Source: Tubulanus polymorphus (lineage: Eukaryota > Animalia > Nemertea). From it: a DNA stretch of 64,000 nt. Shown here piece by piece: positions 41,915-63,797 of the stretch. Positions within the stretch are counted from its first letter, which is position 1. Each line of letters begins with the position of its first letter. Under the pieces are notes generated by a model. It did not search any database. It had not been told where the DNA came from and was given only the letters and a program-made list of their open reading frames with translations. The translations under genes were made by a program, and so were the position numbers. The DNA is taken from assembly GCF_964204645.1 (NCBI RefSeq), contig NC_134032.1, forward strand, positions 8,916,275 through 8,980,274. Reading direction: 5' to 3'.

Positions 41915-44866
41915 TTAATCTGTCTGTATCTGTCATCTATTACCAGATTGTAAGAGTGAATGAAAGATAGTGTGATTGACCGCCTGAGTGACTACGTGTG
42001 TGGGTGCATGTTTGGTGAAGGTGTATGACTGCATGTGTGTATGAGTTGAGTGAATCGGTGTATGCTAGGGGATTAGAGATTTTATAAGCCTTCATTGGCT
42101 TCATCTAATCTCCTCCACATAATATTAAAACATTTCATATTTGTATATCTCTTTATGACATGTTGTAATTTTATTGTGGAAATGAATTTATTATATTATC
42201 AGTTCACATAATATTCATATATATGTGAAGGAGGTATCAACGGCATCAAACGGACCAAAACCTTTGATGAGCTCGCATATTTAGCGCGCTCTATTGTGTC
42301 CGCGGCAGAGGTCCCGCTTGCAAATGGAAAAGCGTTACAAATATCTAGAAAATATCCTAGTCTGATTCGCCATAAATCGTGGAACCATACTTTATTTATT
42401 CAGACCATTGCAAAATTTCTCTTATAGAAGTCCTGAAGAAGTATTACCCCAAACACTCGACAACATATAGCCTGTTCGCGTTGTTAACCTATACGTATGA
42501 AATATACTTGGGATGAAAACACTAAAGCATCCCTCCTACGTGAATTTGAAAATAATGAGAATTTGAGTTTATCGAATACCTATCTGAGGTTATTGATGAT
42601 GTGTCAGTTTTGTTGCCCCAGATTACATCAGTATACCATAAATAATATGCGTAGCTAGTAAAAGCTTGAGAAGAGAAAAACATCAAGGAAACAATGATGG
42701 TTCGACAGAGACTAAATATGAGAAGAAAAGAACTTAAAACAGAGGAGAGAAAGCTCTCGGCTTCCAACCGTCCCAATGTACTTGAATATTACTACAAACG
42801 TAAACAGAAACGAGTTGCTATATGATTTAATAATAACAGTAATAATAACAGTATGATAATTATAATTTCATAAAGCTGTCATCTCTCTAAACAGTAAGAG
42901 CAATGCTCAAACTTTTTGAAATGTCTTTAAATCTATAAGTGTCCCGACGGAGGAATTTCAAGATAATATCGATAATGTTTGTTGAACGCGAACTCAAGGT
43001 GCTTCAAAGTCAACCAAAGGCATTCAACAAACTGGAATTATATCATGCAATATCAGAGACCTAAATGATAAAATGTTTGTTGAAAAATAATAAAGGGGTA
43101 TAGAATTAGGGGTATAAAAAGAAATGACGATAAAATGAAGTTATATGAATCATTTCACTCGTCCATTTAAACTCTTCAATGGAATGCTGAAAACCGGTGA
43201 TTTCCCTAAAATTCTCTTAACAAAGGGAATACTAGGCTACTACCGCATTGAGAGACTATAAAACCGCATAACTCCACGTTGCTCTATGAAGACATTGTCG
43301 CGTACCACAGAAAACCTTCAGCTATACACGGCGATAAATTTGTAACCGGTTCTTAAACAATATAGCGGTTCTATGGTGACAATATCTTGGGGAAATATTA
43401 AGCCTGACTACTGTGCTGAAATGCAGCTTATTTCTATGTTGACAACATTATGAAGGAGCTCAAAATAATCCGATGGACATGCACTAGCCCATCTCACAAG
43501 TCTCCCGGAATCACTTGTTCAAAATTGTGGTCGTGGAATCAAAGCTACTGGAGTCATATCCTATGAAGGAAGTGGTCTCTCCAACGGGTGCAGTTTTCCG
43601 TCATAGCTGGTGCTGAGTTTGCTTAAAAGTATAAGTGTGTTAGGTCCGTGGTTAGGTCCGTAGATGCGTCACGGGCAGTGCTATGCGCATTGAGAGACCG
43701 TTAGGCACGCGATTTAGATCTACGAGCAATTATCTCAAGTTGAGATAATTGATCGTAGGTAAGATGTACAGTCTTGATCGGTTTTGATCAAAGCACATAC
43801 TGCTCTGATGGTCCGACAGTTCTATGCGTAATTAGAGACCGCCAGTGAATCATCAAGGCGGCGAGCCCGGCTAATCAATAGTCGCAAATGGGTTTTGGTA
43901 GTTTTTAATGAGACCGGTTTTAATGAGACCAACCACTGCACGCAAAAACAAGCTGAGCTTGCTATCCTGAAGCCAAAAACGGAGGCAGCTTCCCAGCTAT
44001 CGCTGCAGTGAGTCAGAGTTTACAGTCCAAACACCAGAAACAGTAAACCATGCGACGTAGTGGTGATACAGAACAAAAGCGGTCAGACAGTTCTATGCGC
44101 ATTGAAAGACCGTCATCCATGTTCATTCTAAATTAGAGCATTCCTCAGTGTCGAAGCCAGGATAAGTATGTGTAGAAATACTAAACTAGTAAAACAGGCG
44201 TTAGGTTGATTAATGAAAAGATAGTGTCGATTGTGATTCTGCTTACTCTATTTAGTCCGCCGATTGTGTCCAGGTTTATAAGTATAGTGTTAAGACCATG
44301 GGCCGGTTTTATAGTTGAGATCTAGATCCTATTTTCCTAGATGTTGTGGGAATTTGGGTCGGATCTTACTTTTTAGGATCAGGCTTTTGTTCTCTACCAG
44401 ACAAAAGGGTTAAGCTTAATTGTCTTTCTTAGTCTTTCTTAGTCAGTTCTCATTATTGGACTTATTTAAGTACTTTTTTAAGTATTTAAGCCTGGTACCT
44501 TATGGATAGCTTGGAATTGACCCATACTTTTAAGATAAAAGTTATGATGATTGCTATATTCGTTAATCGCCATAGTATTGTAAAAACTGTTGTGAGTGGA
44601 TATCATGCGTTATATTAAATTCACCAGATGACAGTCTTAACTGAAGACGGCGGAAAAGATTATAAAGATCCAATAAAAATTAGATAATCATGGTCCTGTA
44701 GAGTTAAGTAATCATAGGTAGCTAATTTTGACAGTAGTCAAAGCCATCGAAAATATGAACTATGCGAAACCAAGAAAGATTTGAGGTAATATAAATTCTT
44801 AGTGTTTCGTTTTGAAGATGAAGCAGAACCTGACAAACTATCAACTTCATTTTATTCTAATTTCAG

Positions 44867-45431
44867 GCAGGCAATCGAGGAAGGTCCCAATACCCCTCAG
44901 ACGAATTGCCTAGCCCTCAACCACGCGATGTACCCAATGATTACGAACGTTTACACCAACAGATAGGTGACTCTAATCACCGTAATATTCACCCACGTCC
45001 GGTCAGCAATTTCCGGTTCGATGACGATTCAGGCGGCAAATTGGACCGAACCATTTTCTTACATCACGTGATGGTTGTTCCGTCCGGCCGATCTCGACAA
45101 CAACCCGTTAGATCATTGGACGCTCGCAACCATGACGTCACCGACGAAACGATCAATAACGATTACGCGTATGTCGATCAGCTGGACAGCGTGGTCGACA
45201 GTGACGTCGCAACAGATTGGGGCGACGAGAATTGGCCGGAATTGGCCGGATGGTCGTCTAGAACGATTACAACCAGAATTCCGCCAAAAACGGCCAGTAC
45301 GCGAAAACGCGAGAAACTCATCCGCTACGTGACCGAAGCAAAACCTTGTTGCGGAAGTTTGAAATGCGCTTTCGCGATAATCACAGTCATCCTACTACTG
45401 GTGGCGTTCGCGTGTACGATATACTTCAGTT
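44867..45431 (+). CDS. Exon: cytoplasmic tail + signal-anchor TM helix
   Basis: tttcag|AGNRGRSQ...RKREKLIRY...[30 protein letters not shown]|gtaagt. A basic stretch and Cys cluster precede the hydrophobic helix, indicating type II topology. Confidence 0.85.
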
Positions 45432-48400
45432 GTAAGTATTCTCCATCAGTGCTCGCGATCAAAATTAGAACCAACTCATAGGACCTTAAACCGAAATTGA
45501 TACATATATTTTCTGAATTATTAATCCTAGGAAATAATTGGTTCACCTTTTGTACCGTATATCTTCTTATCAGTGTTGTTGGTAATTGCACCCGCTTGTA
45601 ACCCTCTTTAGTGTAAAAACAACTCGAACTCTTGAGTCTACTCAGCCAGATGTATACATTCTATCTCTGAAGCCCCCACGATTCGCTTTTCCCTTTTATA
45701 TAGTTTACTGATTAGCCTGATGTGCAGGCCCTTTACCACACATACTTCGGTGCTGACGGATGGTGACGTATTCATACTGACTATTTGAACTCCATTCGAT
45801 GGTTCCCGGTTAAAAAAGATCTAGATATGTGCTATAAATCTTCAAGGGCAGTTAGAATAAATACATATCAGATTTCATATTCGCAGGAAAAATACCCTTC
45901 TAAAAATGTTCAAAAAGAAATAAGCCTTTTTTAGAGTAAGTCTTCAAACCAGAAGTGCAAACAACATTTGTGGATCTTGTGGAAGTCCCGTAAGATACCT
46001 CCGGACAACCACCCGCGGGCGTGCACCATTCTTTCTTAATTTGTTTTTATTAAACCACTTCTGATATGTTTCTAGTGTACGGATCTGCGTTATTCAGCAG
46101 TGAAGATGCAACAGCTCCCGGCCCTGTACTACCTACTAATCCAATAATAGACGGTAAGTTCTACGCAAGTCGATCCAGCTTAACGTATCAGTTTTTATCT
46201 ATAAGCTTGAAACGACAATGTATTTTAATCGTTGTCCTCATGGAAAACACAAATCGACAAATAGCAACTGTTGAACATGTTTTGTGTTATGTTATCTGTA
46301 GGCTTTTGTTCGGGTGTGCCAAAAAAGTAAAAACGCATTTGACACATATTTTCCCCAGCGATGGATTGACCGAATTCGCTGAAAAGTAGCTAAAGAATTA
46401 AGCCTTAGGCTATCTGCAACAAGTCCACAAATTGTCCGAGTATTTCTCAACTGCTGCCTTCCATTACGATCTGCCATATCGTTTTCAATTGATTCATTCG
46501 TTTGTTTTCCTTTATTTATTATCGTAGTTTATTCGAAAACATATCTCATACAATTGACAATGGTAACGGAATACTCAACTGCGTTAGCGAACAGTCAAAC
46601 TATAGAATATCAAAATCTATCAACTGCTGTAATCAACTATTTCAACGATGCTTTTTATAACACATCACTGTCAGTATTGTATAATTCAACGCGGATTAAG
46701 GAATTCAGGTAAACCAAAATCTATGAAATTCTAAATCGTCAGAATCGTTTAGATCATATTTTGTCTCATGACAAAATAAAACGTGTCAAATACTGAACAC
46801 ATCAAGCAACAATACCCGGTGTCCTACGCACCTTTTCGACTGCCAGCCATGCGTTGAATCGGGGCCGCATTAAGTCGTAGCAGGGAGGTGGGAGTGAAGC
46901 CCAGGTCGGCCTACGCCCACCTTTAGTTACCGATATGTTATTTAACACATTCGCCGCTAACTGCAAGTTATTGTTTCGTTGTTCCAGTTCCTCCATCGTT
47001 ACCATTAGGAGTGTACTCGCAGCTGATACATCATATTCCCTGTTAAATATTTGCACTCTGGCGCATTGAATTACAGAGTTTCTGATTGGCTGGTAATGTG
47101 AACAAACTCTGCATCATTCTCAATGCTCATTGGTCATTCAATTCTGATCAACGGCTGACTATATATTAGCTCTATTTCCAATTACGAGATATCTCGTTGT
47201 AGCAACTGGAAAGAAACGGCAAAGATGTAGCAAATTTTTTCTGGAACCCCCAGATGTATATGAAATCAATAAGTTGACTCAGGGTCCCTAGTTTTGACGG
47301 ATAAAAATTAACTTGTACAAATTTTTCATATTTCTGTGTGAATGACACCAGGAATGGCAGCGTTATAGCAGATGCGATCACGCGATTGAATGACATTGTC
47401 GTGTTATCTACGTTAGAGAAGTTTCTCGGACGTAACGACTCAACACTGGAAAACGTGAACATCGACAGTTCCCGGAGTATAGCCGTCAGACTCCCTATGA
47501 ACATACAAGGTACATTTTGAAATAATGCTATCGTGTGAAATTGATGACGTATTCGTGAGTTCTAAGAAAGGCCTGGAATGAACCCCTCAGCCAATTTGGA
47601 TCCATCTAAAATTTAAAAAAAATGTACTTTCTGGAAGTGTAACGGCAAATTTCCGTACCGAACATTAGGTGTTTGTTGTTGAATTTTTGTTCACCAATTG
47701 AAAATCCTGAACACTGTTGGAGTGTGGACGGACACTTCTTAAAAGTGTACTGATAAAACATCGTATGTCTGGTTATTCTAGTTCGTCGTCATTTCATAAT
47801 ATATCTCTGTAAAGACCTCTCAAAGCACATGAAGTATGGAAGATAAATAATGAGAAGGGTAACAAAAAAAGAAAGTTTAAGGAGAAGTGTGTCCAGGCTG
47901 CTGATTGATACCAGTTGCCTTTAACGCCCTCTCCTCATTTATTTGATTTATTTAATCATCACCTTCGCTTCCATAGTTCTATCGAAACTGGTTGATTTTC
48001 GAAAATAATTTTACATTTCAAAAATGTGCATGTACACATGCATCATCCTAAAATGGTGGTAGGGACAACTATTATTCTGAATGTTTTTCTTTTATTGTAT
48101 CACTTCGATATATTTAGTCTACGAACCTTCGGAGACTACAACACAAAGCACCAGTAGAGTCAGCAATGGGCAAGCGACTACCGAAAGGAATTTTTCCTTT
48201 TCCTCTAAGGCCCCGAAAACCACTAATACCCGAAAAACTACTGAATTCGTGAAAACGACTGAAGCCAAAAGAACCCCAGCAGACCATACAACCGCTGCTG
48301 CACAAACAACCACTGTAGACCACAAAACCACTGCAGCACAAACTACAACTCAATACCACGCATCCACTGAAGCACAAACAACCACTCCATACCACCCATC

Positions 48401-51400
48401 CACTGAAGCCACCACTGAACCTCAAACCACCACTCCATACCACCAATCCACTGAACCACAAACAACCACTCCATATCACCAATCCACTGAAGCTCAAACA
48501 ACCACTCCGTACCAACCATCCACTAAAGCACAAACAACCACTCCATATTACCAATCCATTGAAGCTCAAACAACCACTCCATACCACCCATCCACTGAAG
48601 CACAAACAACCACTCCATATCACCAATCCACTGAACCACAAACCACCACTCCATACCACCAATCCACTGAACCACAAACAACCACTCCATATCACCAATC
48701 TACTGAAGCACAAACCACCACTCCATACCACCAATCCACTGAACCACAAACCACCACTCCATACCTCCAATCCACTGAACCACAAAGAACCACTCCATAT
48801 CACCAATCTACTGAAGCACAAACAACCACTCCATACCACCAATCCACTGAACCACAAACAACCACTCCATATCACCAATCTACTGAAGCACAAACAACCA
48901 CTCCATACCACCAATCCACTGAACCACAAACAACCACTCCATATCACCAATCCACTGAACCACAAACAACCACTCCATATCACCAATCTACTGAACCACA
49001 AACAACCACTCCATACCACCAATCCACTGAACCACAAACAACCACTCCATATCACCAATCTACTGAAGCACAAACAACCACTCCATATTACCAATCCACT
49101 GAACCACAAACAACCACTCAATACCATCCATCCACTGAACCACAAACAACCACTCCACATCACCAATCCACTGAAGCTCAAACCACCACTCCATACCACC
49201 AATCCACTGAACCACAAAGAACCACTCCATATCACCAATCTACTGAACGACAAACAACCACTCCATACCACCAATCCACTGAACCACAAACCACCATTCC
49301 ATACCACCAATCCACTGAACCACAAACCACCACTCAATACCTCCAATCCACTGAACCACAAAGAACCACTCCATATCACCAATCTACTGAAGCACAAACA
49401 ACCATTCCATACCACCAATCCACTGAACCACAAACAACCACTCCATATCACCAATCCACTGAAGCTCAAACAACCACTCCATACCAACCATCCACTGTAG
49501 CACAAACAACCACTCCATACCATCCATCCACTGAACCACAAACACTCACTCCATATCATCCATCCACTGAACCACAAACAACCACTCCATACCACCAATC
49601 CACTGAAGCTCAAACAACCACTCCATACCAACCATCTACTGTAGCACAAACAACCACTCCATATCATCCATCCACTGAACCACAAATAAACACTCCATAC
49701 CATCCATCCACTGAACCACAAACACTCACTCCATATCATCCATCCACTGAACCACAAACAACCACTCCATACCACCAATCCACTGAAGCTCAAACAACCA
49801 CTCCATACCAACCATCTACTGTAGCACAAACAACCACTCCATATCATCCATCCACTGAACCACAAATAAACACTCCATATCACCAATCCACTGAAGCACA
49901 AACAACCACTACAACGAATTTAACAGGTATGTTTTAAGATAGAAGCTTAATAGAAATATCAAATTTGATCTGAAGATGGGAAAATCAACCGCAGCCCAGA
50001 ACTTACACAGTGGTCAAATGGTTTTATTTATCTACAGAATGCTCGCAGGGTCGTTATCGATGTTCGACGGGTAGGTGTATATCGCAATATTGGTTATGCG
50101 ATGGTTATTGGGACTGTCTCTCTGGAGAAGATGAAAGAAACTGTACCGGTAAGTGACTATCCTTGTAAAAACTTCACAAATTTCATATTTTGAGTTTCAT
50201 CGGCTTTATCCTGTTATGAGCAGGTCTTGTGATGAAGCATGGTCCACTTAGCCGAGTAAAATCAATATGTATAAATGTAGCGCGCACACTGCGCTAACTC
50301 TTCCTATGCTGCCACAACCTGATGTCATAAGACACAAATTGAATCTGTGTTTGCATGTTCATTATTGAAACGTTTAACGGCTGTTTCTTTTTCCTAAAGC
50401 GACGACCCAAGAAATCTCAACTACCGGACCCATAACCTCGAGCCCCTCATCGAGCCCTTCAGGTATGTTTTTAGATAGAAACTTAACAAAAATATCAAAT
50501 ATAATCTTAAGATAGGAAAGCCAACCGTCTGAAAATTTCAAAAATGTAGATTAATATTTGTAAGAATTACGAACTTTTGAATGAGATGAGCAATAATTCA
50601 AGTTGAATTATCGGGAAGACGATATCAATGTTTATAACTTCACCAGCGCACATTGTTGCATTAACTTTATAAATGAGTGATATCATAAAAAAGTTTATTA
50701 TCAGCCGAGTTCATCGATATTTTTACTTTGTTTCTATCTTAATCAAATCCAGAGATATAAAAACAAACTGTCGACTGATGGTAGACCATATACGAACTAC
50801 GAGGAACGTATTTCTGTAAGCAATAGATACGTTCCTCGTTGTTCGTACAATATGAGTGGGGGCCCTCAGATTTAGGATAAGTACCGACAGGTACTGATAT
50901 TCATTCATGATTTGTACTGTAGAAACATAATACATGCGTTGAATGAATGAGTCGCGAGACATGAGTCGCGACACAACTGCAGCCACGGACGAAAACAGTG
51001 TTAATTTGGTTATATTGTTCCTTAGAATGTTCCCATGGTCGTTACCGATGTTCTAGCGGTCGGTGTATATCGCAAGGTTGGTTATGCGATGGTGACGAGG
51101 ACTGCCCATCTGGAGATGATGAAAGAAACTGCACCGGTAAGGGAATATCCTCGTGACAACTTCAATAATTCCATTTTTTAGTTTCATCTGCATCGTCTCG
51201 TTAAATATGCTATAATTGTTGAATTTCTTCATTCACTTGAGCACCGAAACTTAAAGTATCCTTGCTTGCAGGGCCCGGGGTTAAATTGTCTCCAGCCGAA
51301 GCTCAGCACAACCCTATACCGGCTGACCCCAATTGGTCTATTACACCGGTCTAAGTAGCCACTATATGTCTATCCAATCAGATTTCTTGTATTGATAGAT

Positions 51401-54400
51401 GCCGTTGAAAAACAACGCATCTGATTGGCTTAATACATAGACTGATGGCCGCTGAGCGGCAAATGTCAACAAAGGAAATCTTAATCATCCATGACACATC
51501 TCCCCAACTTTTGTAACCAGTTATTTTCAGGATACCGCCTTGGCTCAGTGCCAATGGTGCCACATTAGGTTCAAATCCCAAAAATCCAAATTTCCTTCAT
51601 TGCGAATATTGCAGTTACAGCAAAGAAAACACTTTATCGCTGCTTTGCAGCTATAGTTTGGTTGATATTATTCTATAGAATGCCCCCAGGGTCGATACCG
51701 ATGTTCTAGCGGTCGGTGTATATCGCAAGGTTGGTTATGCGATGGTGACGAGGACTGCCCATCTGGAGATGATGAAAGAAACTGCAGTACCGGTAAGGGA
51801 ATATCCTCGTGACAACTTCAATAATTCCATTTTTTAGTTTCATCTGCTTCGTCTCGTTAAATATGCTATAATTGTTGAATTTCTTCACTCACTTGAGCAC
51901 CGAAACTTAAAGTATCCTTGCTTGCAGAGCCCGGGGTTAAATTGTCTCCAGCCGAAGCTCAGCACAACCCTATACCGGCTGACCCCAATTGGTCTATTAC
52001 ACCGGTCTAAGTAGCCACTATATGTCTATCCAATCAGATTTCTTGTATTGATAGATGCCGTTGAAAAACAACGCATCTGATTGGCTTAATACATAGACTG
52101 ATGGCCGCTGAGCGGCAAATGTCAACAAAGGAAATCTTAATCATCCATGACACATCTCCCCAACTTTTGTAACCAGTTATTTTCAGGATACCGCCTTGGC
52201 TCAGTGCCAATGGTGCCACATTAGGTTCAAATCCCAAAAATCCAAATTTCCTTCATTGCGAATATTGCAGTTACAGCAAAGAAAACACTTTATCGCTGCT
52301 TTGCAGCTATAGTTTGGTTGATATTATTCTATAGAATGCCCCCAGGGTCGATACCGATGTTCTAGCGGTCGGTGTATATCGCAAAGTTGGTTATGCGATG
52401 GGGAAGAGGACTGCCCATCTGGAGAAGATGAAAGAAACTGTACCGGAAAGGGAATATCCTTGTCGAAACCTCAATGATTTCATTTCTTTAAGATTCATCA
52501 GCCTTGCCTCGTTATGACCCCACGTAGGTCACTTGTCAATCACGTTTAGATAGAATCTAAATGCAAATATCAATTAACATCGGGAGATAATAAAAACAAC
52601 CTTGTCATGACTGGTTAACCATATACGAACAACGAAGAACGTGTTTCAGAAGCAATATAGAATTAGTGGGCCCTCAGATTTATTCGGTACACAATTTGTT
52701 TCATGGCAGCAGGATAAGTACTGCCAGGTACTAATATTCATCCATGATTTGTACTGTAGAAACATGATACATGTGTTGAATGCCCCGGATTACCGATAAT
52801 GATAATAATCGTGACATGAGTCGCGACACAACCGCAGCCACGGACAAAAACAGGGTTAATTTGGTTATATTGTTCCTTAGAATGTCCCCATGGTCGTTAC
52901 CGATGTTCTAGTGGCAGGTGTATATCGCAAAGTTGGTTATGCAATGGTTTCGTGAACTGTCCATCTGGAGAAGATGAAAGAAACTGTACCGGTAAGGGAC
53001 TATCCTCTTGTGGAAATTTCAATGTCATTTTGTTCAAGTAATACATCGGCTTTGTCCCGTTACGACCACACATAGGTGACCTGTGACACACATTTAGATA
53101 GAAGCTAAATGCAAACATCAGAAGATAATAAAAACAATCGCAACCCAGGACAAAAACATTGTTAATTTTGGTGATATTATTCTATAGAATGCCCCCAGGG
53201 TCGTTATCGATGTTCTAGCGGTCGGTGTATATCGCAAAGTTGGTTATGCGATGGTTACGAGGACTGTCCATCTGGAGATGATGAAAGAAACTGCAGTACC
53301 GGAAAGGGAATATCCTCGTGACAACTTCAATAATTCAATTTTTTAGTTTCATCTGCTTCGTCTCGTTAAATATGCTATAATTGTTGAATTTCTTCACTCA
53401 CTTGAGCACCGAAACTTAAAGTATCCTTGCTTGCAGGGCCCGGGGTTAAATTGTCTCCAGCCGAAGCTCAGCACAACCCTATACCGGCTGACCCCAATTG
53501 GTCTATTACACCGGTCTAAGTAGCCACTATATGTATATCCAATCAGATTTCTTGTATTGATAGATGCCGTTGAAAAACAACGCATCTGATTGGCTTAATA
53601 CATAGACTGATGGCCGCTGAGCGGCAAATGTCAACAAAGGAAATCTTAATCATCCATGACACATCTCCCCAACTTTTGTAACCAGTTATTTTCAGGATAC
53701 CGCCTTGGCTCAGTGCCAATGGTGCCACATTAGGTTCAAATCCCAAAAATCCAAATTTCCTTCATTGCGAATATTGCAGTTACAGCAAAGAAAACACTTT
53801 ATCGCTGCTTTGCAGCTATAGTTTGGTTGATATTATTCTATAGAATGCCCCCAGGGTCGATACCGATGTTCTAGCGGTCGGTGTATATCGCAAAGTTGGT
53901 TATGCGATGGGGAAGAGGACTGCCCATCTGGAGAAGATGAAAGAAACTGTACCGGAAAGGGAATATCCTTGTCGAAACCTCAATGATTTCATTTCTTTAA
54001 GATTCATCAGCCTTGCCTCGTTATGACCCCACGTAGGTCACTTGTCAATCACGTTTAGATAGAATCTAAATGCAAATATCAATTAACATCGGGAGATAAT
54101 AAAAACAACCTTGTCATGACTGGTTAACCATATACGAACAACGAAGAACGTGTTTCAGAAGCAATATAGAATTAGTGGGCCCTCAGATTTATTCGGTACA
54201 CAATTTGTTTCATGGCAGCAGGATAAGTACTGCCAGGTACTAATATTCATCCATGATTTGTACTGTAGAAACATGATACATGTGTTGAATGCCCCGGATT
54301 ACCGATAATGATAATAATCGTGACATGAGTCGCGACACAACCGCAGCCACGGACAAAAACAGGGTTAATTTGGTTATATTGTTCCTTAGAATGTCCCCAT

Positions 54401-57400
54401 GGTCGTTACCGATGTTCTAGTGGCAGGTGTATATCGCAAAGTTGGTTATGCAATGGTTTCGTGAACTGTCCATCTGGAGAAGATGAAAGAAACTGTACCG
54501 GTAAGGGACTATCCTCTTGTGGAAATTTCAATGTCATTTTGTTCAAGTAATACATCGGCTTTGTCCCGTTACGACCACACATAGGTGACCTGTGACACAC
54601 ATTTAGATAGAAGCTAAATGCAAACATCAGAAGATAATAAAAACAATCGCAACCCAGGACAAAAACATTGTTAATTTTGGTGATATTATTCTATAGAATG
54701 CCCCCAGGGTCGTTATCGATGTTCTAGCGGTCGGTGTATATCGCAAAGTTGGTTATGCGATGGTTACGAGGACTGTCCATCTGGAGATGATGAAAGAAAC
54801 TGCAGTACCGGAAAGGGAATATCCTCGTGACAACTTCAATAATTCAATTTTTTAGTTTCATCTGCTTCGTCTCGTTAAATATGCTATAATTGTTGAATTT
54901 CTTCACTCACTTGAGCACCGAAACTTAAAGTATCCTTGCTTGCAGGGCCCGGGGTTAAATTGTCTCCAGCCGAAGCTCAGCACAACCCTATACCGGCTGA
55001 CCCCAATTGGTCTATTACACCGGTCTAAGTAGCCACTATATGTATATCCAATCAGATTTCTTGTATTGATAGATGCCGTTGAAAAACAACGCATCTGATT
55101 GGCTTAATACATAGACTGATGGCCGCTGAGCGGCAAATGTCAACAAAGGAAATCTTAATCATCCATGACACATCTCCCCAACTTTTGTAACCAGTTATTT
55201 TCAGGATACCGCCTTGGCTCAGTGCCAATGGTGCCACATTAGGTTCAAATCCCAAAAATCCAAATTTCCTTCATTGCGAATATTGCAGTTACAGCAAAGA
55301 AAACACTTTATCGCTGCTTTGCAGCTATAGTTTGGTTGATATTATTCTATAGAATGCCCCCAGGGTCGATACCGATGTTCTAGCGGTCGGTGTATATCGC
55401 AAAGTTGGTTATGCGATGGGGAAGAGGACTGCCCATCTGGAGAAGATGAAAGAAACTGTACCGGAAAGGGAATATCCTTGTCGAAACCTCAATGATTTCA
55501 TTTCTTTAAGATTCATCAGCCTTGCCTCGTTATGACCCCACGTAGGTCACTTGTCAATCACGTTTAGATAGAATCTAAATGCAAATATCAATTAACATCG
55601 GGAGATAATAAAAACAACCTTGTCATGACTGGTTAACCATATACGAACAACGAAGAACGTGTTTCAGAAGCAATATAGAATTAGTGGGCCCTCAGATTTA
55701 TTCGGTACACAATTTGTTTCATGGCAGCAGGATAAGTACTGCCAGGTACTAATATTCATCCATGATTTGTACTGTAGAAACATGATACATGTGTTGAATG
55801 CCCCGGATTACCGATAATGATAATAATCGTGACATGAGTCGCGACACAACCGCAGCCACGGACAAAAACAGGGTTAATTTGGTTATATTGTTCCTTAGAA
55901 TGTCCCCATGGTCGTTACCGATGTTCTAGTGGCAGGTGTATATCGCAAAGTTGGTTATGCAATGGTTTCGTGAACTGTCCATCTGGAGAAGATGAAAGAA
56001 ACTGTACCGGTAAGGGACTATCCTCTTGTGGAAATTTCAATGTCATTTTGTTCAAGTAATACATCGGCTTTGTCCCGTTACGACCACACATAGGTGACCT
56101 GTGACACACATTTAGATAGAAGTTAAATGCAAACATCAGAAGATAATAAAAACAATCGCAACCCAGGACAAAAACATTGTTAATTTTGGTGATATTATTC
56201 TATAGAATGCCCCCAGGGTCGTTATCGATGTTCTAGCGGTCGGTGTATATCGCAAAGTTGGTTATGCGATGGTTACGAGGACTGTCCATCTGGAGATGAT
56301 GAAAGAAACTGCAGTACCGGAAAGGGAATATCCTCGTGACAACTTCAATAATTCAATTTTTTAGTTTCATCTGCTTCGTCTCGTTAAATATGCTATAATT
56401 GTTGAATTTCTTCACTCACTTGAGCACCGAAACTTAAAGTATCCTTGCTTGCAGGGCCCGGGGTTAAATTGTCTCCAGCCGAAGCTCAGCACAACCCTAT
56501 ACCGGCTGACCCCAATTGGTCTATTACACCGGTCTAAGTAGCCACTATATGTATATCCAATCAGATTTCTTGTATTGATAGATGCCGTTGAAAAACAACG
56601 CATCTGATTGGCTTAATACATAGACTGATGGCCGCTGAGCGGCAAATGTCAACAAAGGAAATCTTAATCATCCATGACACATCTCCCCAACTTTTGTAAC
56701 CAGTTATTTTCAGGATACCGCCTTGGCTCAGTGCCAATGGTGCCACATTAGGTTCAAATCCCAAAAATCCAAATTTCCTTCATTGCGAATATTGCAGTTA
56801 CAGCAAAGAAAACACTTTATCGCTGCTTTGCAGCTATAGTTTGGTTGATATTATTCTATAGAATGCCCCCAGGGTCGATACCGATGTTCTAGCGGTCGGT
56901 GTATATCGCAAAGTTGGTTATGCGATGGGGAAGAGGACTGCCCATCTGGAGAAGATGAAAGAAACTGTACCGGAAAGGGAATATCCTTGTCGAAACCTCA
57001 ATGATTTCATTTCTTTAAGATTCATCAGCCTTGCCTCGTTATGACCCCACGTAGGTCACTTGTCAATCACGTTTAGATAGAATCTAAATGCAAATATCAA
57101 TTAACATCGGGAGATAATAAAAACAACCTTGTCATGACTGGTTAACCATATACGAACAACGAAGAACGTGTTTCAGAAGCAATATAGAATTAGTGGGCCC
57201 TCAGATTTATTCGGTACACAATTTGTTTCATGGCAGCAGGATAAGTACTGCCAGGTACTAATATTCATCCATGATTTGGACTGTAGAAACATGATACATG
57301 TGTTGAATGCCCCGGATTACCGATAATGATAATAATCGTGACATGAGTCGCGACACAACCGCAGCCACGGACAAAAACAGGGTTAATTTGGTTATATTGT

Positions 57401-60400
57401 TCCTTAGAATGTCCCCATGGTCGTTACCGATGTTCTAGTGGCAGGTGTATATCGCAAAGTTGGTTATGCAATGGTTTCGTGAACTGTCCATCTGGAGAAG
57501 ATGAAAGAAACTGTACCGGTAAGGGACTATCCTCTTGTGGAAATTTCAATGTCATTTTGTTCAAGTAATACATCGGCTTTGTCCCGTTACGACCACACAT
57601 AGGTGACCTGTGACACACATTTAGATAGAAGCTAAATGCAAACATCAGAAGATAATAAAAACAATCGCAACCCAGGACAAAAACATTGTTAATTTTGGTG
57701 ATATTATTCTATAGAATGCCCCCAGGGTCGTTATCGATGTTCTAGCGGTCGGTGTATATCGCAAAGTTGGTTATGCGATGGTTACGAGGACTGTCCATCT
57801 GGAGATGATGAAAGAAACTGCAGTACCGGAAAGGGAATATCCTCGTGACAACTTCAATAATTCAATTTTTTAGTTTCATCTGCTTCGTCTCGTTAAATAT
57901 GCTATAATTGTTGAATTTCTTCACTCACTTGAGCACCGAAACTTAAAGTATCCTTGCTTGCAGGGCCCGGGGTTAAATTGTCTCCAGCCGAAGCTCAGCA
58001 CAACCCTATACCGGCTGACCCCAATTGGTCTATTACACCGGTCTAAGTAGCCACTATATGTATATCCAATCAGATTTCTTGTATTGATAGATGCCGTTGA
58101 AAAACAACGCATCTGATTGGCTTAATACATAGACTGATGGCCGCTGAGCGGCAAATGTCAACAAAGGAAATCTTAATCATCCATGACACATCTCCCCAAC
58201 TTTTGTAACCAGTTATTTTCAGGATACCGCCTTGGCTCAGTGCCAATGGTGCCACATTAGGTTCAAATCCCAAAAATCCAAATTTCCTTCATTGCGAATA
58301 TTGCAGTTACAGCAAAGAAAACACTTTATCGCTGCTTTGCAGCTATAGTTTGGTTGATATTATTCTATAGAATGCCCCCAGGGTCGATACCGATGTTCTA
58401 GCGGTCGGTGTATATCGCAAGGTTGGTTATGCGATGGTGACGAGGACTGCCCATCTGGAGATGATGAAAGAAACTGCAGTACCGGTAAGGGAATATCCTC
58501 GTGACAACTTCAATAATTCAATTTTTTAGTTTCATCTGCTTCGTCTCGTTAAATATGCTATAATTGTTGAATTTCTTCACTCACTTGAGCACCGAAACTT
58601 AAAGTATCCTTGCTTGCAGAGCCCGGGGTTAAATTGTCTCCAGCCGAAGCTCAGCACAACCCTATACCGGCTGACCCCAATTGGTCTATTACACCGGTCT
58701 AAGTAGCCACTATATGTCTATCCAATCAGATTTCTTGTATTGATAGATGCCGTTGAAAAACAACGCATCTGATTGGCTTAATACATAGACTGATGGCCGC
58801 TGAGCGGCAAATGTCAACAAAGGAAATCTTAATCATCCATGACACATCTCCCCAACTTTTGTAACCAGTTATTTTCAGGATACCGCCTTGGCTCAGTGCC
58901 AATGGTGCCACATTAGGTTCAAATCCCAAAAATCCAAATTTCCTTCATTGCGAATATTGCAGTTACAGCAAAGAAAACACTTTATCGCTGCTTTGCAGCT
59001 ATAGTTTGGTTGATATTATTCTATAGAATGCCCCCAGGGTCGATACCGATGTTCTAGCGGTCGGTGTATATCGCAAAGTTGGTTATGCGATGGGGAAGAG
59101 GACTGCCCATCTGGAGAAGATGAAAGAAACTGTACCGGAAAGGGAATATCCTTGTCGAAACCTCAATGATTTCATTTCTTTAAGATTCATCAGCCTTGCC
59201 TCGTTATGACCCCACGTAGGTCACTTGTCAATCACGTTTAGATAGAATCTAAATGCAAATATCAATTAACATCGGGAGATAATAAAAACAACCTTGTCAT
59301 GACTGGTTAACCATATACGAACAACGAAGAACGTGTTTCAGAAGCAATATAGAATTAGTGGGCCCTCAGATTTATTCGGTACACAATTTGTTTCATGGCA
59401 GCAGGATAAGTACTGCCAGGTACTAATATTCATCCATGATTTGTACTGTAGAAACATGATACATGTGTTGAATGCCCCGGATTACCGATAATGATAATAA
59501 TCGTGACATGAGTCGCGACACAACCGCAGCCACGGACAAAAACAGGGTTAATTTGGTTATATTGTTCCTTAGAATGTCCCCATGGTCGTTACCGATGTTC
59601 TAGTGGCAGGTGTATATCGCAAAGTTGGTTATGCAATGGTTTCGTGAACTGTCCATCTGGAGAAGATGAAAGAAACTGTACCGGTAAGGGACTATCCTCT
59701 TGTGGAAATTTCAATGTCATTTTGTTCAAGTAATACATCGGCTTTGTCCCGTTACGACCACACATAGGTGACCTGTGACACACATTTAGATAGAAGCTAA
59801 ATGCAAACATCAGAAGATAATAAAAACAATCGCAACCCAGGACAAAAACATTGTTAATTTTGGTGATATTATTCTATAGAATGCCCCCAGGGTCGTTATC
59901 GATGTTCTAGCGGTCGGTGTATATCGCAAAGTTGGTTATGCGATGGTTACGAGGACTGTCCATCTGGAGATGATGAAAGAAACTGCAGTACCGGAAAGGG
60001 AATATCCTCGTGACAACTTCAATAATTCAATTTTTTAGTTTCATCTGCTTCGTCTCGTTAAATATGCTATAATTGTTGAATTTCTTCACTCACTTGAGCA
60101 CCGAAACTTAAAGTATCCTTGCTTGCAGGGCCCGGGGTTAAATTGTCTCCAGCCGAAGCTCAGCACAACCCTATACCGGCTGACCCCAATTGGTCTATTA
60201 CACCGGTCTAAGTAGCCACTATATGTATATCCAATCAGATTTCTTGTATTGATAGATGCCGTTGAAAAACAACGCATCTGATTGGCTTAATACATAGACT
60301 GATGGCCGCTGAGCGGCAAATGTCAACAAAGGAAATCTTAATCATCCATGACACATCTCCCCAACTTTTGTAACCAGTTATTTTCAGGATACCGCCTTGG

Positions 60401-63400
60401 CTCAGTGCCAATGGTGCCACATTAGGTTCAAATCCCAAAAATCCAAATTTCCTTCATTGCGAATATTGCAGTTACAGCAAAGAAAACACTTTATCGCTGC
60501 TTTGCAGCTATAGTTTGGTTGATATTATTCTATAGAATGCCCCCAGGGTCGATACCGATGTTCTAGCGGTCGGTGTATATCGCAAGGTTGGTTATGCGAT
60601 GGTGACGAGGACTGCCCATCTGGAGATGATGAAAGAAACTGCAGTACCGGTAAGGGAATATCCTCGTGACAACTTCAATAATTCCATTTTTTAGTTTCAT
60701 CTGCTTCGTCTCGTTAAATATGCTATAATTGTTGAATTTCTTCACTCACTTGAGCACCGAAACTTAAAGTATCCTTGCTTGCAGGGCCCGGGGTTAAATT
60801 GTCTCCAGCCGAAGCTCAGCACAACCCTATACCGGCTGACCCCAATTGGTCTATTACACCGGTCTAAGTAGCCACTATATGTCTATCCAATCAGATTTCT
60901 TGTATTGATAGATGCCGTTGAAAAACAACGCATCTGATTGGCTTAATACATAGACTGATGGCCGCTGAGCGGCAAATGTCAACAAAGGAAATCTTAATCA
61001 TCCATGACACATCTCCCCAACTTTTGTAACCAGTTATTTTCAGGATACCGCCTTGGCTCAGTGCCAATGGTGCCACATTAGGTTCAAATCCCAAAAATCC
61101 AAATTTCCTTCATTGCGAATATTGCAGTTACAGCAAAGAAAACACTTTATCGCTGCTTTGCAGCTATAGTTTGGTTGATATTATTCTATAGAATGCCCCC
61201 AGGGTCGATACCGATGTTCTAGCGGTCGGTGTATATCGCAAAGTTGGTTATGCGATGGGGAAGAGGACTGCCCATCTGGAGAAGATGAAAGAAACTGTAC
61301 CGGAAAGGGAATAATCTTGTCGAAACCTCAATGATTTCATTTCTTTAAGATTCATCAGCCTTGCCTCGTTATGACCCCACTTAGGTCACTTGTCAATCAC
61401 GTTTAGATAGAATCTAAATGCAAATATCAATTAACATCGGGAGATAATAAAAACAACCTTGTCATGACTGGTTAACCATATACGAACAACGAAGAACGTG
61501 TTTCAGAAGCAATATAGAATTAGTGGGCCCTCAGATTTATTCGGTACACAATTTGTTTCATGGCAGCAGGATAAGTACTGCCAGGCACTAATATTCATCC
61601 ATGATTTGTACTGTAGAAACATGATACATGTGTTGAATGCCCCGGATTACCGATAATGATAATAATCGTGACATGAGTCGCGACACAACCGCAGCCACGG
61701 ACAAAAACAGGGTTAATTTGGTTATATTGTTCCTTAGAATGTCCCCATGGTCGTTACCGATGTTCTAGCGGCAGGTGTATATCGCAAAGTTGGTTATGCG
61801 ATGGTGTCGTGAACTGTCCATCTGGAGAGGATGAAAGAAACTGTACCGGTAAGGGACTATCCTCTTGTGGAAATTTCAATTTCATTTTGTTCAAGTAATA
61901 CATCGGCTTTGTCCCGTTACGACCACACATAGGTGACCTCTCACACACATTTAGATAGAAGCTAAATGCAAACATCAGAAGATAATAAAAACAACCGCAA
62001 CCCAGGACAAAAACATTGTTTATTTGGTGATATTATTCTATAGAATGCCCCCAGGGTCGTTATCGATGTTCTAGCGGTCGGTGTATATCGCAAAGTTGGT
62101 TATGCGATGGTGACGAGGACTGTCCATCTGGAGATGATGAAAGAAACTGCACCGGTAAGGGAATATCCTCGTGAAAACCTCTGCTTCGTCTCGTTAAATA
62201 TGCTATTATTGTTAAATTTCTTCACTCACTTGAGCACCCAAACTTAAAGTATCCTTGCTTGCAGGGCCCGGGGTTAAATTGTCTCCAGCCAAAGCTCAAC
62301 ACAACCCTATACCGGCTGACCCTTATTAGTCTATTTCACCGGTTTAAGATGTGTTGGTTGGATATTGGGTTGCCACTAAGTATCCACTATATATTTATCC
62401 AATCAGATTTTTGGTATTGATAAATGCCGGTAAAAAAACAATGTATCTGATTGGCTTAATACATAGACTGGTGGCCACTGAGCGGCAAATATCAACAAAA
62501 GAAGTTTGGGAAGTGTGATAATAGGCTAATGAATGGTCTGCGGCCAGGCATTGTTTAGGCGTGAGCTTCGACAGGAGGCAGTCAAAACCGAGCGAGGGAG
62601 GATGATCTGACACAATTCAATTTTAATTTCAAAATACCTTTATTGCTCCGTAATGTCCTATTACATTGTAGCTTTTGTAAAAATGGAATATAAATGATAT
62701 ACAAATATGAAAAATATTAGTAAACAGTATGTGATTATTTGACATCAAGCATGAATTTATTTATTGTTGACAGTGCAAAAAGCCTCAATTATCTAGGACA
62801 TGACTAGAGTCAAGAATTGAATATTTGGAAGCACCAGTCAATCCCCGAATATACCGCCCACAATGTAATTTGACATGATAATTGAATTTTAAATGATATT
62901 TAGATTTAACAAGTTTTTCCTGTTTTTATCTTTGAATTCGCAGTATCACAAATTAAGCCTGTGTTATTCGAGGGATTCCTGTTAATATGCTGAGATACAC
63001 ACCCTTGAAATATGAAAAAAAATTATCTCCATAATCTGAACCGGGCCAGCTTCCACAAACAGTAGAGTATGCAGTACCACATAATTTGACCTTAAAATAA
63101 CTCGAAAACTGTACCCTGTATTGTTCAGTGGTGTTACAACGAAGATGCGAATTAGTCGAGCGTTAGACGACGCAGTTCTGATTTCAGACTCTGCGACCTG
63201 ACTACTATATGCGCTAGACAAGCCTGTTATTTAATACAGAAGGTGGAGGCTCACCAATACTGACAAAACAAAAGCTATTGCTTTCGAAAAATGGAAATAA
63301 TAATGTCCCGTCGCATGAGCAAAATTATCGATTTCTTACTACACTGGAAGCTTTACTAAGTTTCGAAAATTTCGAAAAGCATTACCTGGCATTGCAACAA

Positions 63401-63797
63401 AAACACTATTTTACGTATAAAGAAAAACCCAAAAATAAAGTTAAGATCTAGCCCTTTGTTAGACTAGTTGATAGCGATGTATGTGAAATCTGTGGAAGTT
63501 GAAGTAACCATTGCTTACCGATCGAGATGAGGCTGTCCTTCCTTCCTTCCTCACTCCCTTCCCCACCCTCCCTTCCTCCCCTCACTCCCTGCTGTCAAAT
63601 CGATGTAAAATTTCTGTGTTAATTTGATGAATGAAGATTATGATCAATGTCACTATTATTCTTATCATAATAATTCTATTTTCCAGCGTGTTCTACGAAT
63701 GTATTTGATTGCGGTAACGGCACTGATTGTGTATCGTCAAGTCGCGTGTGTGATGGGTTTCCGGACTGTCCGAACGGTCGAGACGAAGCCGTCTGCT
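44867..63797 (+). CDS. Large type II membrane protein: TM - SEA - mucin stalk - 24 LDLa modules (TTSP-like stem; 3' end outside the window)
   Basis: Phase-compatible exons: 44867-45431, 46076-46153, 46528-46708, 47352-47509, 48118-49926, 50038-50148, 50400-50462, 22 LDLa exons in 51026-62154, and 63687-63797. More than 1,800 codons if all are used. A candidate start mini-exon is 44762-44785 (MRNQERFE|gtaata), less certain. Confidence 0.85.
46528..47509 (+). CDS. Two exons encoding a SEA domain (46528-46708 and 47352-47509)
   Basis: [72 protein letters not shown]. The junction creates FRNGSVIA, compared with the SEA cleavage sites of MUC1 (FRPG/SVVV) and matriptase (G/SVIA). Confidence 0.85.
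48118..49926 (+). CDS. Mucin-like exon (1809 nt), about 43 x 36-bp repeats encoding TE(P/A)QTTTPYHQS
   Basis: Open frame with phase 1-1 splice sites (atttag| ... |gtatgt). A 180-bp (5-unit) higher-order duplication lies at the 3' end. Confidence 0.9.
51026..62154 (+). repeat. Tandem exon+intron array of 22 LDLa exons (111 or 114 nt, phase 1-1)
   Basis: Exon starts: 51026, 51679, 52335, 52881, 53188, 53844, 54390, 54697, 55353, 55899, 56206, 56862, 57408, 57715, 58371, 59027, 59573, 59880, 60536, 61192, 61738, 62044. Consensus [30 protein letters not shown](E/D)DERNC(S)T. Periods of 1509 and 2165 bp. Confidence 0.95.
63687..63797 (+). CDS. Divergent LDLa exon following the array
   Basis: ttccag|[37 protein letters not shown]|gtaagt; six Cys, phase 1-1. 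Confidence 0.88.

What the first reader, a model, noticed from the sequence alone, without database searches (positions are those of the whole stretch)
52335..61310. Half of the LDLa exons in the array have a non-canonical GA splice donor
Seen: 11 of the 22 arrayed exons end ACCG|GAAAGGGAAT at the position where their sisters have ACCG|GTAAGGGA. The GA exons end at 52445, 53301, 53954, 54810, 55463, 56319, 56972, 57828, 59137, 59993 and 61302. The change is fixed in two exon classes with different downstream introns: A (CDGEEDC, 6 copies) and C (CDGYEDC, 5 copies). Class D shares the 542-bp intron of class C but keeps GT. All GA exons have intact frames, acceptors, six Cys and acidic Ca ligands. 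Inference, four possibilities: (a) functional GA-AG introns; (b) in-frame skipping of symmetric phase-1 exons, giving variable module number; (c) read-through to nearby stops (A: [11 protein letters not shown]; C: TGKGISS*), giving a ladder of truncated isoforms; (d) use of a weak upstream GT. For (d), class C TGCA|GTACCG stays in frame, while class A T|GTACCG joined to the next exon's AA makes a TAA stop. Any of these would be a donor-encoded way of tuning ectodomain length.
Basis: partly seen in the sequence, partly recalled or inferred. Interest (0 to 1): 0.88.

Follow-up and report, generated by a model that had tools for sequence, protein, structure and literature searches.

The report
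Amplified GA splice-donor variant in LDLa exons
Eleven near-identical exons of a ribbon-worm membrane protease gene do begin their introns with GA instead of GT, but they are copies of one or two mutations spread by very recent tandem duplication. The one annotated transcript I could see skips them all, so they are more likely silent passenger exons than a length-tuning device.

Summary
Eleven LDLa exons end ACCG|GAAAGGG at exactly the stated coordinates, and twelve sister exons have GT.

The eleven sites are not independent. The array is a very young higher-order tandem repeat, A-B-C = 1,509 bp, with D inserted twice. Copies within a class differ by 0-1 bases, so only one or two T>A events were amplified.

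The gene is a type II transmembrane serine protease of Tubulanus polymorphus: TM, SEA, mucin, LDLa array, SRCR-like, trypsin. It is RefSeq LOC141910239.

The only RefSeq product I could retrieve, isoform X9, splices exon E1 (donor after 51136) straight to exon B* (61738). That skips all 19 internal modules, including every GA exon. Isoforms X1-X8 could not be retrieved.

No RNA data showed use, skipping or retention of a GA donor. U1 snRNA genes are all canonical. An independent DNA run of a diverged lineage lacks the A module and the amplification.

One lead favours real use. Both GA classes have a GT exactly six bases upstream (GTACCG|GA), the arrangement on which the human FGFR GA donor depends.

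Best reading (about 0.5): an amplified donor-disabling variant whose exons are skipped in frame. Functional GA-AG splicing is about 0.2. Interest is modest.

The parts
52335..52445 (+). Class A LDLa exon, GA donor at 52446-52447
53844..53954 (+). Class A LDLa exon, GA donor
55353..55463 (+). Class A LDLa exon, GA donor
56862..56972 (+). Class A LDLa exon, GA donor
59027..59137 (+). Class A LDLa exon, GA donor
61192..61302 (+). Class A LDLa exon of the terminal, older unit. GA donor. Its module has 4 mismatches to the other A modules, all in the intron.
53188..53301 (+). Class C LDLa exon (114 nt), GA donor at 53302-53303
54697..54810 (+). Class C LDLa exon, GA donor
56206..56319 (+). Class C LDLa exon, GA donor
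57715..57828 (+). Class C LDLa exon, GA donor
59880..59993 (+). Class C LDLa exon, GA donor
50038..50148 (+). Exon E0, first array-type LDLa exon. GT donor (GTAAGTGA). Present in RefSeq isoform X9.
50400..50462 (+). 63-nt Ser/Thr/Pro linker exon between E0 and E1, used in isoform X9
51026..51136 (+). Exon E1, GT donor. In isoform X9 this donor is joined to the acceptor of B* at 61738.
51137..61737 (+). The 10.6-kb interval removed as one intron in RefSeq isoform X9. It holds all 19 internal modules: D x3, A x6, B x5, C x5.
51679..51792 (+). Class D exon, GT donor. Further copies lie at 58371-58484 and 60536-60649.
52881..52991 (+). Class B exon, GT donor, acidic Ca ligands lost (CNGFVNC). Further copies lie at 54390-54500, 55899-56009, 57408-57518 and 59573-59683.
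61738..61848 (+). Exon B*, a diverged B (3.3% from the others), GT donor, present in isoform X9
62044..62154 (+). Exon L, the last array-type exon. It is C-like but with GT, D instead of Y, and no AGT insertion. Present in isoform X9.
63688..63797 (+). Next LDLa exon, outside the array family, GT donor
44861..49925 (+). 5' part of the same gene: exons for the cytoplasmic tail and TM, the SEA domain, and the 603-codon mucin exon (48117-49925)

Best explanation
The GA donors are real germline sequence. They trace to one or two T>A substitutions at intron position +2, not to eleven events.

The variant arose in a family of LDLa-module exons that has been reshuffled by unequal crossing-over and short gene conversion. 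It then hitch-hiked when a 1,509-bp A-B-C unit, sometimes with a D module added, was amplified about five-fold very recently.

Every exon in the array is symmetric (phase 1-1). An exon with a disabled donor can therefore be left out without breaking the frame that leads to the C-terminal trypsin domain. The variant is thus tolerated and is probably close to neutral.

My inference is that the A and C exons are mostly skipped, or lie inside a larger removed interval as in RefSeq isoform X9 (E1 joined directly to B*). On this reading the pattern is a by-product of repeat dynamics, not an evolved device for setting ectodomain length.

Shown: the sequence pattern, the repeat structure and its youth, the gene identity, the exon chain of isoform X9, and the canonical U1 genes. 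Inferred: that GA blocks normal splicing in this animal, and that skipping is the main outcome.
For: 1. Within-class identity is 0-1 mismatches over 546 bp (A), 307 bp (B) and 656 bp (C). All five C modules are identical. Only the terminal unit is older (A 4/546; B* 3.3%).

2. The modules are mosaics. The 5' half of A equals D. C equals L plus a D-type 3' end and intron. The C and D modules align with only a few differences over 656 bp, one of which is +2. A and C share an identical 21-nt tract GTACCGGAAAGGGAATATCCT, bounded by differences on both sides.

3. The exon family exists only at this locus, plus one module in the upstream tandem paralogue LOC141910238. The expansion is therefore lineage-specific.

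4. An independent raw-read DNA run with the same species label (X5, reads 95-99% alike) gives zero depth on the A module and almost none on the C donor. The B-like module shows about 1-2 copies' worth of depth. Eight of 20 reads carry G>A at +1 of a B-like donor, a second donor-killing change in this exon family.

5. RefSeq XP_074657066.1 (LOC141910239 isoform X9) maps as E0, linker exon, E1, then B*, L and the 63688 exon. It omits all 11 GA exons and 8 GT exons, and the donor at each mapped exon end is a GT.

6. The trypsin domain with its His/Asp/Ser motifs lies downstream of the array, so only in-frame outcomes keep the enzyme.

7. GA halves the predicted U1 pairing: -4.0 against -8.7 kcal/mol for the sister GT sites. 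The twelve best U1 genes all read ATACTTACCTG. Sites matching a compensating variant are not U1 genes.

8. About 15 diverged LDLa exons of this gene and its paralogue all use GT.

9. GA donors make up 0.006% of human introns (PMC5714493, citing Parada 2014).
Against: No transcript evidence was obtained for this gene in any available run, so skipping itself is not shown. The runs that might be RNA hold none of the sampled words even of E0 and E1.

Isoform X9 is one of at least nine predicted isoforms, and I could not see the other eight. X9 also skips GT exons, so it does not isolate an effect of GA.

The same +2 change in two classes with different introns needs either a conversion tract of 22 nt or less, or a parallel hit. 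Both are somewhat unlikely under pure neutrality.

The GA exons keep perfect LDLa coding capacity, whereas the GT-bearing B class has lost its acidic ligands. However, the copies are too young for decay to be informative.

Both GA classes have a GT six bases upstream and a GGG at +5 to +7. These resemble the context in which the human FGFR GA donor is used efficiently (PMC4176328).
Confidence: 0.5

Rival explanations
1. The GA-AG introns are functional and spliced by the major spliceosome, as at the FGFR1-3 GA donor. The weak GT six bases upstream (GTACCG|GA) and the good match at -1, +1 and +3 to +5, plus the GGG at +5 to +7, would recruit the machinery. Cleavage would occur at ACCG|GA, so all 23 modules could appear in the protein.
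For: Both GA classes have GT exactly 6 nt upstream of the GA. Use of the FGFR GA donor is reported to depend on a canonical GT 6 nt upstream and on downstream intronic elements (PMC4176328; PMC7072748).

GA exons keep intact frames, acceptors, six Cys and acidic ligands.

The same change in two classes could reflect tolerance or selection.

Standard annotation and read mappers hide GA junctions (PMC5714493, PMC4176328), so their absence from a RefSeq model is weak evidence.
Against: The upstream GT is a very poor site here (CT|GTACCG or CA|GTACCG; predicted U1 duplex about -2 kcal/mol).

The exon ends in CG, not the AG that is obligate in the GA donors of Eurytemora (PMC5714493).

No U1 variant was found. 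No GA donor was seen among about 15 diverged LDLa exons nearby. No RNA support was found. The intact coding is uninformative because the copies are identical by recent descent.
Confidence: 0.2
2. The GA introns are retained. Short introns would be handled by intron definition, so reading continues to the nearby stops ([11 protein letters not shown] after A, TGKGISS* after C). This would give protease-less membrane stalks or, more likely, transcripts destroyed by nonsense-mediated decay. The expanded allele would then be a partial or complete loss-of-function allele.
For: Introns are short (196-542 nt). In-frame stops follow within 7-11 codons. The first GA exon (52335) comes after only E0, E1 and D.
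Against: RefSeq predicts a full-length, in-frame product that bypasses the block. The downstream LDLa, SRCR-like and trypsin exons are intact, and residues 1330-1704 are 85% identical to the paralogue's. No RNA evidence was found either way.
Confidence: 0.15
3. The GT six bases upstream is used as a cryptic donor. In class C this keeps the frame (NCSTE becomes NCK). In class A it creates a TAA with the next exon.
For: The sequence outcomes are verified. Tandem donors 6 nt apart are a known alternative-splicing format, as in the FGFR VT+/VT- forms (PMC4176328).
Against: The site matches the consensus only at +1 to +3, with a U1 duplex of about -2 kcal/mol. Class A would be lethal to the frame. 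It would leave a single residue between two Cys-rich modules.
Confidence: 0.07
4. The GA sites are an assembly or consensus artefact, and the true sequence is GT.
For: I could not lay reads of the assembled individual on the sites. Highly identical tandem repeats are hard to polish.
Against: The change is a substitution outside a homopolymer. It is present in all 11 A and C copies and in none of the 11 B, D, E1 and L copies with the same flanks. The older terminal A copy has it too. Run X1 of the source project holds 79% of the sampled 31-mers of the stretch.
Confidence: 0.02

Closest known systems
GA 5' splice site of vertebrate FGFR1-3 (VT+/VT- alternative donors; Twigg 1998, Brackenridge 2003, as summarised in PMC4176328 and PMC7072748)
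   Same: A |GA donor lies exactly six bases downstream of a GT. It is followed by AAG, with G-rich sequence just downstream, and the intron ends in AG.
   Different: Here the upstream GT is a very weak site, and in class A its use would create a stop. Use of the GA is not demonstrated here. There are eleven copies in one gene produced by recent duplication, not one conserved site. I could not read the primary paper; its details come from citing papers and from memory.
Genome-wide GA/GG donors of the copepod Eurytemora affinis and of Oikopleura dioica (PMC5714493, PMC7072748)
   Same: GA at +1/+2 with A at +3, in otherwise normal U2-type introns.
   Different: Those donors have an obligate AG at the exon end; here it is CG. 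Those occur in 3-12% of introns genome-wide; here none was seen outside this array. A U1 variant was proposed there; all U1 genes inspected here are canonical.
Donor +2 T>A variants that cause exon skipping, and pseudo-exons carried in tandemly duplicated exon arrays (general knowledge)
   Same: A single-base change of the invariant GT in symmetric, in-frame, modular exons. Copies are spread by unequal crossing-over. The one annotated product I could see omits them.
   Different: The skipped exons are still perfect coding modules, and half of a 23-exon array is affected. This is unusual in extent, though explained by the age of the repeat.
Type II transmembrane serine proteases with LDLa stems (enteropeptidase, matriptase, TMPRSS9-like)
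   Same: N-terminal TM, SEA, LDLa modules, SRCR-like region and C-terminal trypsin domain.
   Different: A roughly 600-residue mucin stalk and an array of up to 23 near-identical LDLa modules, of which the RefSeq isoform uses four.

Membership tests
FGFR-type tandem GT-N4-GA donor (functional U2-type GA-AG intron) | Intron begins GA and ends AG | tested here: met
   ACCG|GA...TAG|AATG at all 11 sites
FGFR-type tandem GT-N4-GA donor (functional U2-type GA-AG intron) | Canonical GT donor six nucleotides upstream of the GA | tested here: inconclusive
   A GT is present at -6 in both classes (GTACCG|GA), but it is a very weak donor (U1 duplex about -2 kcal/mol)
FGFR-type tandem GT-N4-GA donor (functional U2-type GA-AG intron) | Downstream intronic enhancer elements | tested here: inconclusive
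   Only a GGG at +5 to +7 can be pointed to. Function is not testable from sequence.
FGFR-type tandem GT-N4-GA donor (functional U2-type GA-AG intron) | Spliced junction at the GA seen in RNA | tested here: inconclusive
   No informative RNA was obtained. X6 and X7 gave nothing. X8 gave one ambiguous 208-nt contig that does not touch a GA donor.
Eurytemora/Oikopleura-type GA donors | Obligate AG at the end of the upstream exon and A at +3 | tested here: not met
   The exon ends CCG. +3 is A (PMC5714493).
Eurytemora/Oikopleura-type GA donors | GA donors common across the genome, or a variant U1 snRNA | tested here: not met
   0 of about 15 neighbouring diverged LDLa exons have GA. Twelve U1 loci are canonical, and variant-pattern sites are not U1 genes. 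A true genome-wide intron census was not possible.
U12-type AT-AC intron (class A only) | 5' splice site RTATCCTT | tested here: met
   ATATCCTT starts 8 nt downstream of the exon end in class A. A U12 snRNA gene is present.
U12-type AT-AC intron (class A only) | Branch site TCCTTRAY 10-20 nt upstream of the 3' end, and an in-frame, sensible product | tested here: not met
   Only TTCCTTAG|A is present, at the acceptor itself. The nearest in-frame AC lies 21 nt inside exon B and would delete that module's first Cys (reading).
LDL-receptor class A module (Pfam PF00057) | Six-Cys module scoring above the Pfam threshold | tested here: met
   Classes A, B, C and D score 44-49 bits against a cut-off of 24.1
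Type II transmembrane serine protease | N-terminal anchor, SEA, stem modules and a C-terminal trypsin domain with the catalytic triad | tested here: met
   SEA, 10 LDLa and Trypsin domains in P0015. TAAHC, DIAL and GDSGSP motifs in downstream exons. The TM segment was read from the sequence.

The most novel reading that the evidence does not exclude
A ribbon worm splices GA-AG introns efficiently when the GA lies six bases downstream of a GT, as in vertebrate FGFR genes. This one protease gene would then carry eleven working GA introns. That would give a natural, multi-copy system for studying how a 'dead-end' donor is rescued, and it would mean that module number (12 to 23) is set by competition between GA and GT donors.
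Probability: 0.15. Interest if true: 0.65.

Novelty: new member of a known kind. Interest (0 to 1): 0.35.

Why it matters
If the leading reading is right, this is an ordinary but clean example of how unequal crossing-over can fill a gene with perfect-looking exons that never reach the mRNA. It also warns against counting repeated copies as independent evidence.

It matters more if the GA donors turn out to be used. They would then be the first multi-copy, FGFR-like GA-AG introns outside vertebrates, in a genome with a canonical U1. That would make the rules for rescuing a GA donor directly testable, because matched GT/GA sister introns (C against D) differ at +2 and only a few other positions.

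Tried and rejected
1. RNA evidence. The single run search found no run on record as RNA that holds the stretch. The three candidate RNA runs hold about none of its words. Laying them on one A-B-C unit gave nothing for X6 and X7. X8 gave one 208-nt contig: a B*-like exon end, 67 unknown letters, then an L-like exon. This contig is not a clean junction and does not involve a GA donor, so it is uninformative.

2. Independent DNA check. X5 turned out to be a diverged lineage (reads 95-99% alike). It does not cover the A module or the C donor, so it could neither confirm nor refute the +2 A.

3. Other RefSeq isoforms. Two protein searches, with the N-terminal and C-terminal regions of P0015, returned only isoform X9 and the paralogue. 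The exact-sequence look-up of its encoding contig returned nothing. The mucin-exon search found no model of this gene.

4. Compensating U1 variant. Rejected.

5. U12-type splicing of class A from the ATATCCTT motif. Rejected for lack of a branch site and of a sensible product.

6. Downstream cryptic GT or GC donors. Before the in-frame stops the only candidate is the GT at +17, which shifts the frame. The phase-keeping GC (+61 in A) and GT (+64 in C) lie beyond the stops.

7. Rfam scan of the window. No RNA genes.

8. The primary FGFR paper (PMC152907) is not held.

9. I did not build, search or fold any joined spliced model. The database protein P0015 was used instead.


Full report
**Observation**

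The pattern is in the sequence exactly as described. ACCG|GAAAGGGAAT ends an exon at 52445, 53301, 53954, 54810, 55463, 56319, 56972, 57828, 59137, 59993 and 61302. ACCG|GTAAGGGA ends eleven sister exons, and one more sister (50038-50148) has GTAAGTGA, giving 23 array exons.

The exons are 111 or 114 nt and phase 1-1. Each encodes a six-Cys module that scores as Pfam Ldl_recept_a. The 14-mer around the GA is nearly private to this locus: 11 of 13 genome hits are here.

**What the array is**

It is a higher-order tandem repeat. A module (exon plus following intron) of class A (546 bp), B (307 bp) and C (656 bp) forms a 1,509-bp unit that occurs five times. A D module (656 bp) is inserted twice, and an older, diverged terminal unit A-B*-L closes the array.

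Within a class the copies differ by 0-1 bases, and all five C modules are identical. Only the terminal A (4/546) and B* (3.3%) are older. The eleven GA sites therefore represent at most two mutational events, copied by amplification. This divergence looks low enough for the expansion to be polymorphic in the population (inference).

The modules are also mosaics:
- The 5' half of A equals D.
- C equals L plus a D-type 3' end and intron.
- The C and D modules align with only a few differences over 656 bp, one being +2.
- A and C share an identical 21-nt tract, GTACCGGAAAGGGAATATCCT, bounded by differences on both sides.

The shared +2 A thus needs either a conversion tract of 22 nt or less, or a parallel hit. 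In a family this reshuffled, a short patch is plausible, but I cannot show which occurred.

**The gene and the organism**

Notes of this scan name the genome as the ribbon worm Tubulanus polymorphus. A database protein confirms this. An exhaustive protein search with the class A module found P0015. It is NCBI XP_074657066.1, 'uncharacterized protein LOC141910239 isoform X9 [Tubulanus polymorphus]', encoded on a contig of the same length as the window's.

P0015 contains SEA, ten LDLa modules and a trypsin domain. Downstream exons fetched from the genome show further LDLa modules, an SRCR-like region and trypsin exons with the His, Asp and Ser motifs. The gene is therefore a type II transmembrane serine protease with a mucin stalk.

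The catalytic domain lies C-terminal to the array, so only in-frame handling of the array preserves the enzyme.

A tandem paralogue upstream (LOC141910238, P0142, 85% identical over residues 1330-1704 of P0015) has a single module of the array type. The expansion is therefore specific to this gene.

**What the annotated product does**

I mapped P0015 back onto the genome. The exon chain is E0 (50038-50148), a 63-nt linker exon (50400-50462) and E1 (51026-51136). It then jumps to B* (61738-61848), L (62044-62154), the 63688 exon and onward.

This isoform removes 51137-61737 as one intron. It contains none of the 19 internal modules: no GA exon, and also none of the internal GT exons D and B.

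The name 'X9' implies at least eight further predicted isoforms. I could not retrieve them.

This is a gene model and not a read-level observation. It shows that a full-length in-frame product exists without any GA exon. It also shows that the skipping in this model is not determined by the GA donors alone.

**Reads**

The one run search found four DNA-like holders from a single study, a 2026 raw-read DNA run of another sample (X5), and several small older runs that may be transcriptomes. Those small runs hold about none of the sampled words, including words from E0 and E1.

I laid X5, X6, X7 and X8 on a single A-B-C unit, 1,524 letters with no long internal repeat.
- X6 and X7 gave nothing.
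- X8 gave one 208-nt contig: a B*-like exon end, 67 unplaced letters, then an L-like exon. It is not a clean splice junction and does not involve a GA donor.
- X5 reads are only 95-99% alike, so they come from a diverged lineage under the same species label.

In X5 the A module has zero depth and the C donor almost none. The B-like module has roughly one to two copies' worth of depth at about 7x sampling. Eight of 20 reads carry G>A at +1 of a B-like donor (52992).

So this second lineage lacks the amplification and the A class as such. It carries a different donor-killing change in the same exon family, which fits dispensable modules.

No run gave evidence for GA use, exon skipping, retention or cryptic-site use.

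**Splicing machinery**

The twelve best of 23 U1 matches all begin ATACTTACCTG. Genome sites that match a compensating variant (ATACTTTCCTGGC, or ATACTTATCTGGC as proposed for Eurytemora) occur at about the chance rate. None lies in a U1-like sequence.

Predicted U1 pairing falls from -8.7 kcal/mol at the GT sisters to -4.0 at the GA sites. About 15 diverged LDLa exons of this gene and its paralogue all use GT.

A U12 snRNA gene exists, and class A introns contain a perfect U12-type 5' motif ATATCCTT eight bases downstream of the exon end. However, there is no TCCTTRAY branch site. The only in-frame AC would remove the first Cys of the next module. I reject this route.

**Comparison with known cases**

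GA donors are 0.006% of human introns (PMC5714493, citing Parada et al. 2014).

The GA/GG donors of Eurytemora have an obligate AG at the exon end and A at +3 (PMC5714493). Here the exon ends CG, so that type is not met.

The FGFR1-3 GA donor is reported to depend on a canonical GT six bases upstream and on downstream intronic elements (PMC4176328, PMC7072748). I could not read the primary paper. Both GA classes here have a GT exactly six bases upstream (CT|GTACCG|GA in A, CA|GTACCG|GA in C) and a GGG at +5 to +7. This is the one feature that raises the odds of genuine GA use above the generic prior. Against it, the upstream GT is very weak, and in class A its own use would create TAA.

**Verdict**

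Its apparent weight ('half of the exons') comes from counting identical young copies.

The most likely reading (about 0.5) is an amplified donor-disabling variant in dispensable, frame-neutral exons that are left out of the mRNA. This makes it a by-product of repeat dynamics and not a length-tuning device.

The alternatives are:
- Functional FGFR-like GA-AG splicing: about 0.2.
- Retention with truncation or decay: about 0.15.
- The cryptic -6 donor: about 0.07.
- Artefact: about 0.02.

Transcript data for this gene would settle the question quickly, and the exact k-mers and primers are listed under next steps.

**Limits of this work**

I built no joined spliced sequence for any search.

Noticed in passing
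window 52454-52461 and the same offset in the other five class A introns: A perfect U12-type 5' splice-site core, ATATCCTT, lies 8 nt downstream of the class A exon end. Sister introns have [A/C]TATCCT[C/T] at the same offset. A U12 snRNA gene exists (G000:C2:4997629-4997778), but no matching branch site was found.
   Followed up: partly
window 50400-50462: A 63-nt phase 1-1 exon encoding a Ser/Thr/Pro linker ([21 protein letters not shown]) lies in the 877-bp interval between the first two LDLa exons. RefSeq isoform X9 uses it.
   Followed up: yes
window 52881-52991 and the other four class B exons: The GT-bearing class B modules have lost the acidic calcium ligands (CNGFVNC instead of CDGxEDC), while the GA-bearing A and C modules keep them. 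The diverged B* has CDGVVNC.
   Followed up: no
window 53544-53645, and the same place in every 542-bp intron: A short element with a 10-nt terminal inverted repeat (CCAATCAGAT ... ATCTGATTGG) sits in the C/D/E1-type introns. In the independent DNA run it has about 50x depth against about 7x expected, so it is a dispersed repeat, probably a MITE.
   Followed up: partly
window 52992 (run X5): In an independent DNA run of a diverged lineage, 8 of 20 reads show G>A at +1 of a B-like donor. This is a second, different donor-destroying change in this exon family.
   Followed up: no
runs X5 and X8 against the window: Runs labelled with the same species differ from the assembly by 1-5% and share variants with each other (53233 C>G, 53256 T>G). 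The species label may therefore cover two diverged lineages.
   Followed up: no
G000:C8:8883554-8912725 (L014-L017): There is a tandem paralogue, LOC141910238 (2,259 aa, with MAM, LDLa, SRCR-like and trypsin). It shares the C-terminal LDLa-SRCR-trypsin part but has only one module of the array type, with a GT donor.
   Followed up: partly
L018:2700-3000 (G000:C8:8992975-8993275): A long (TA)n-type microsatellite, which reads as IYIYIY in translation, fills the intron just after the trypsin exon that carries the catalytic His.
   Followed up: no
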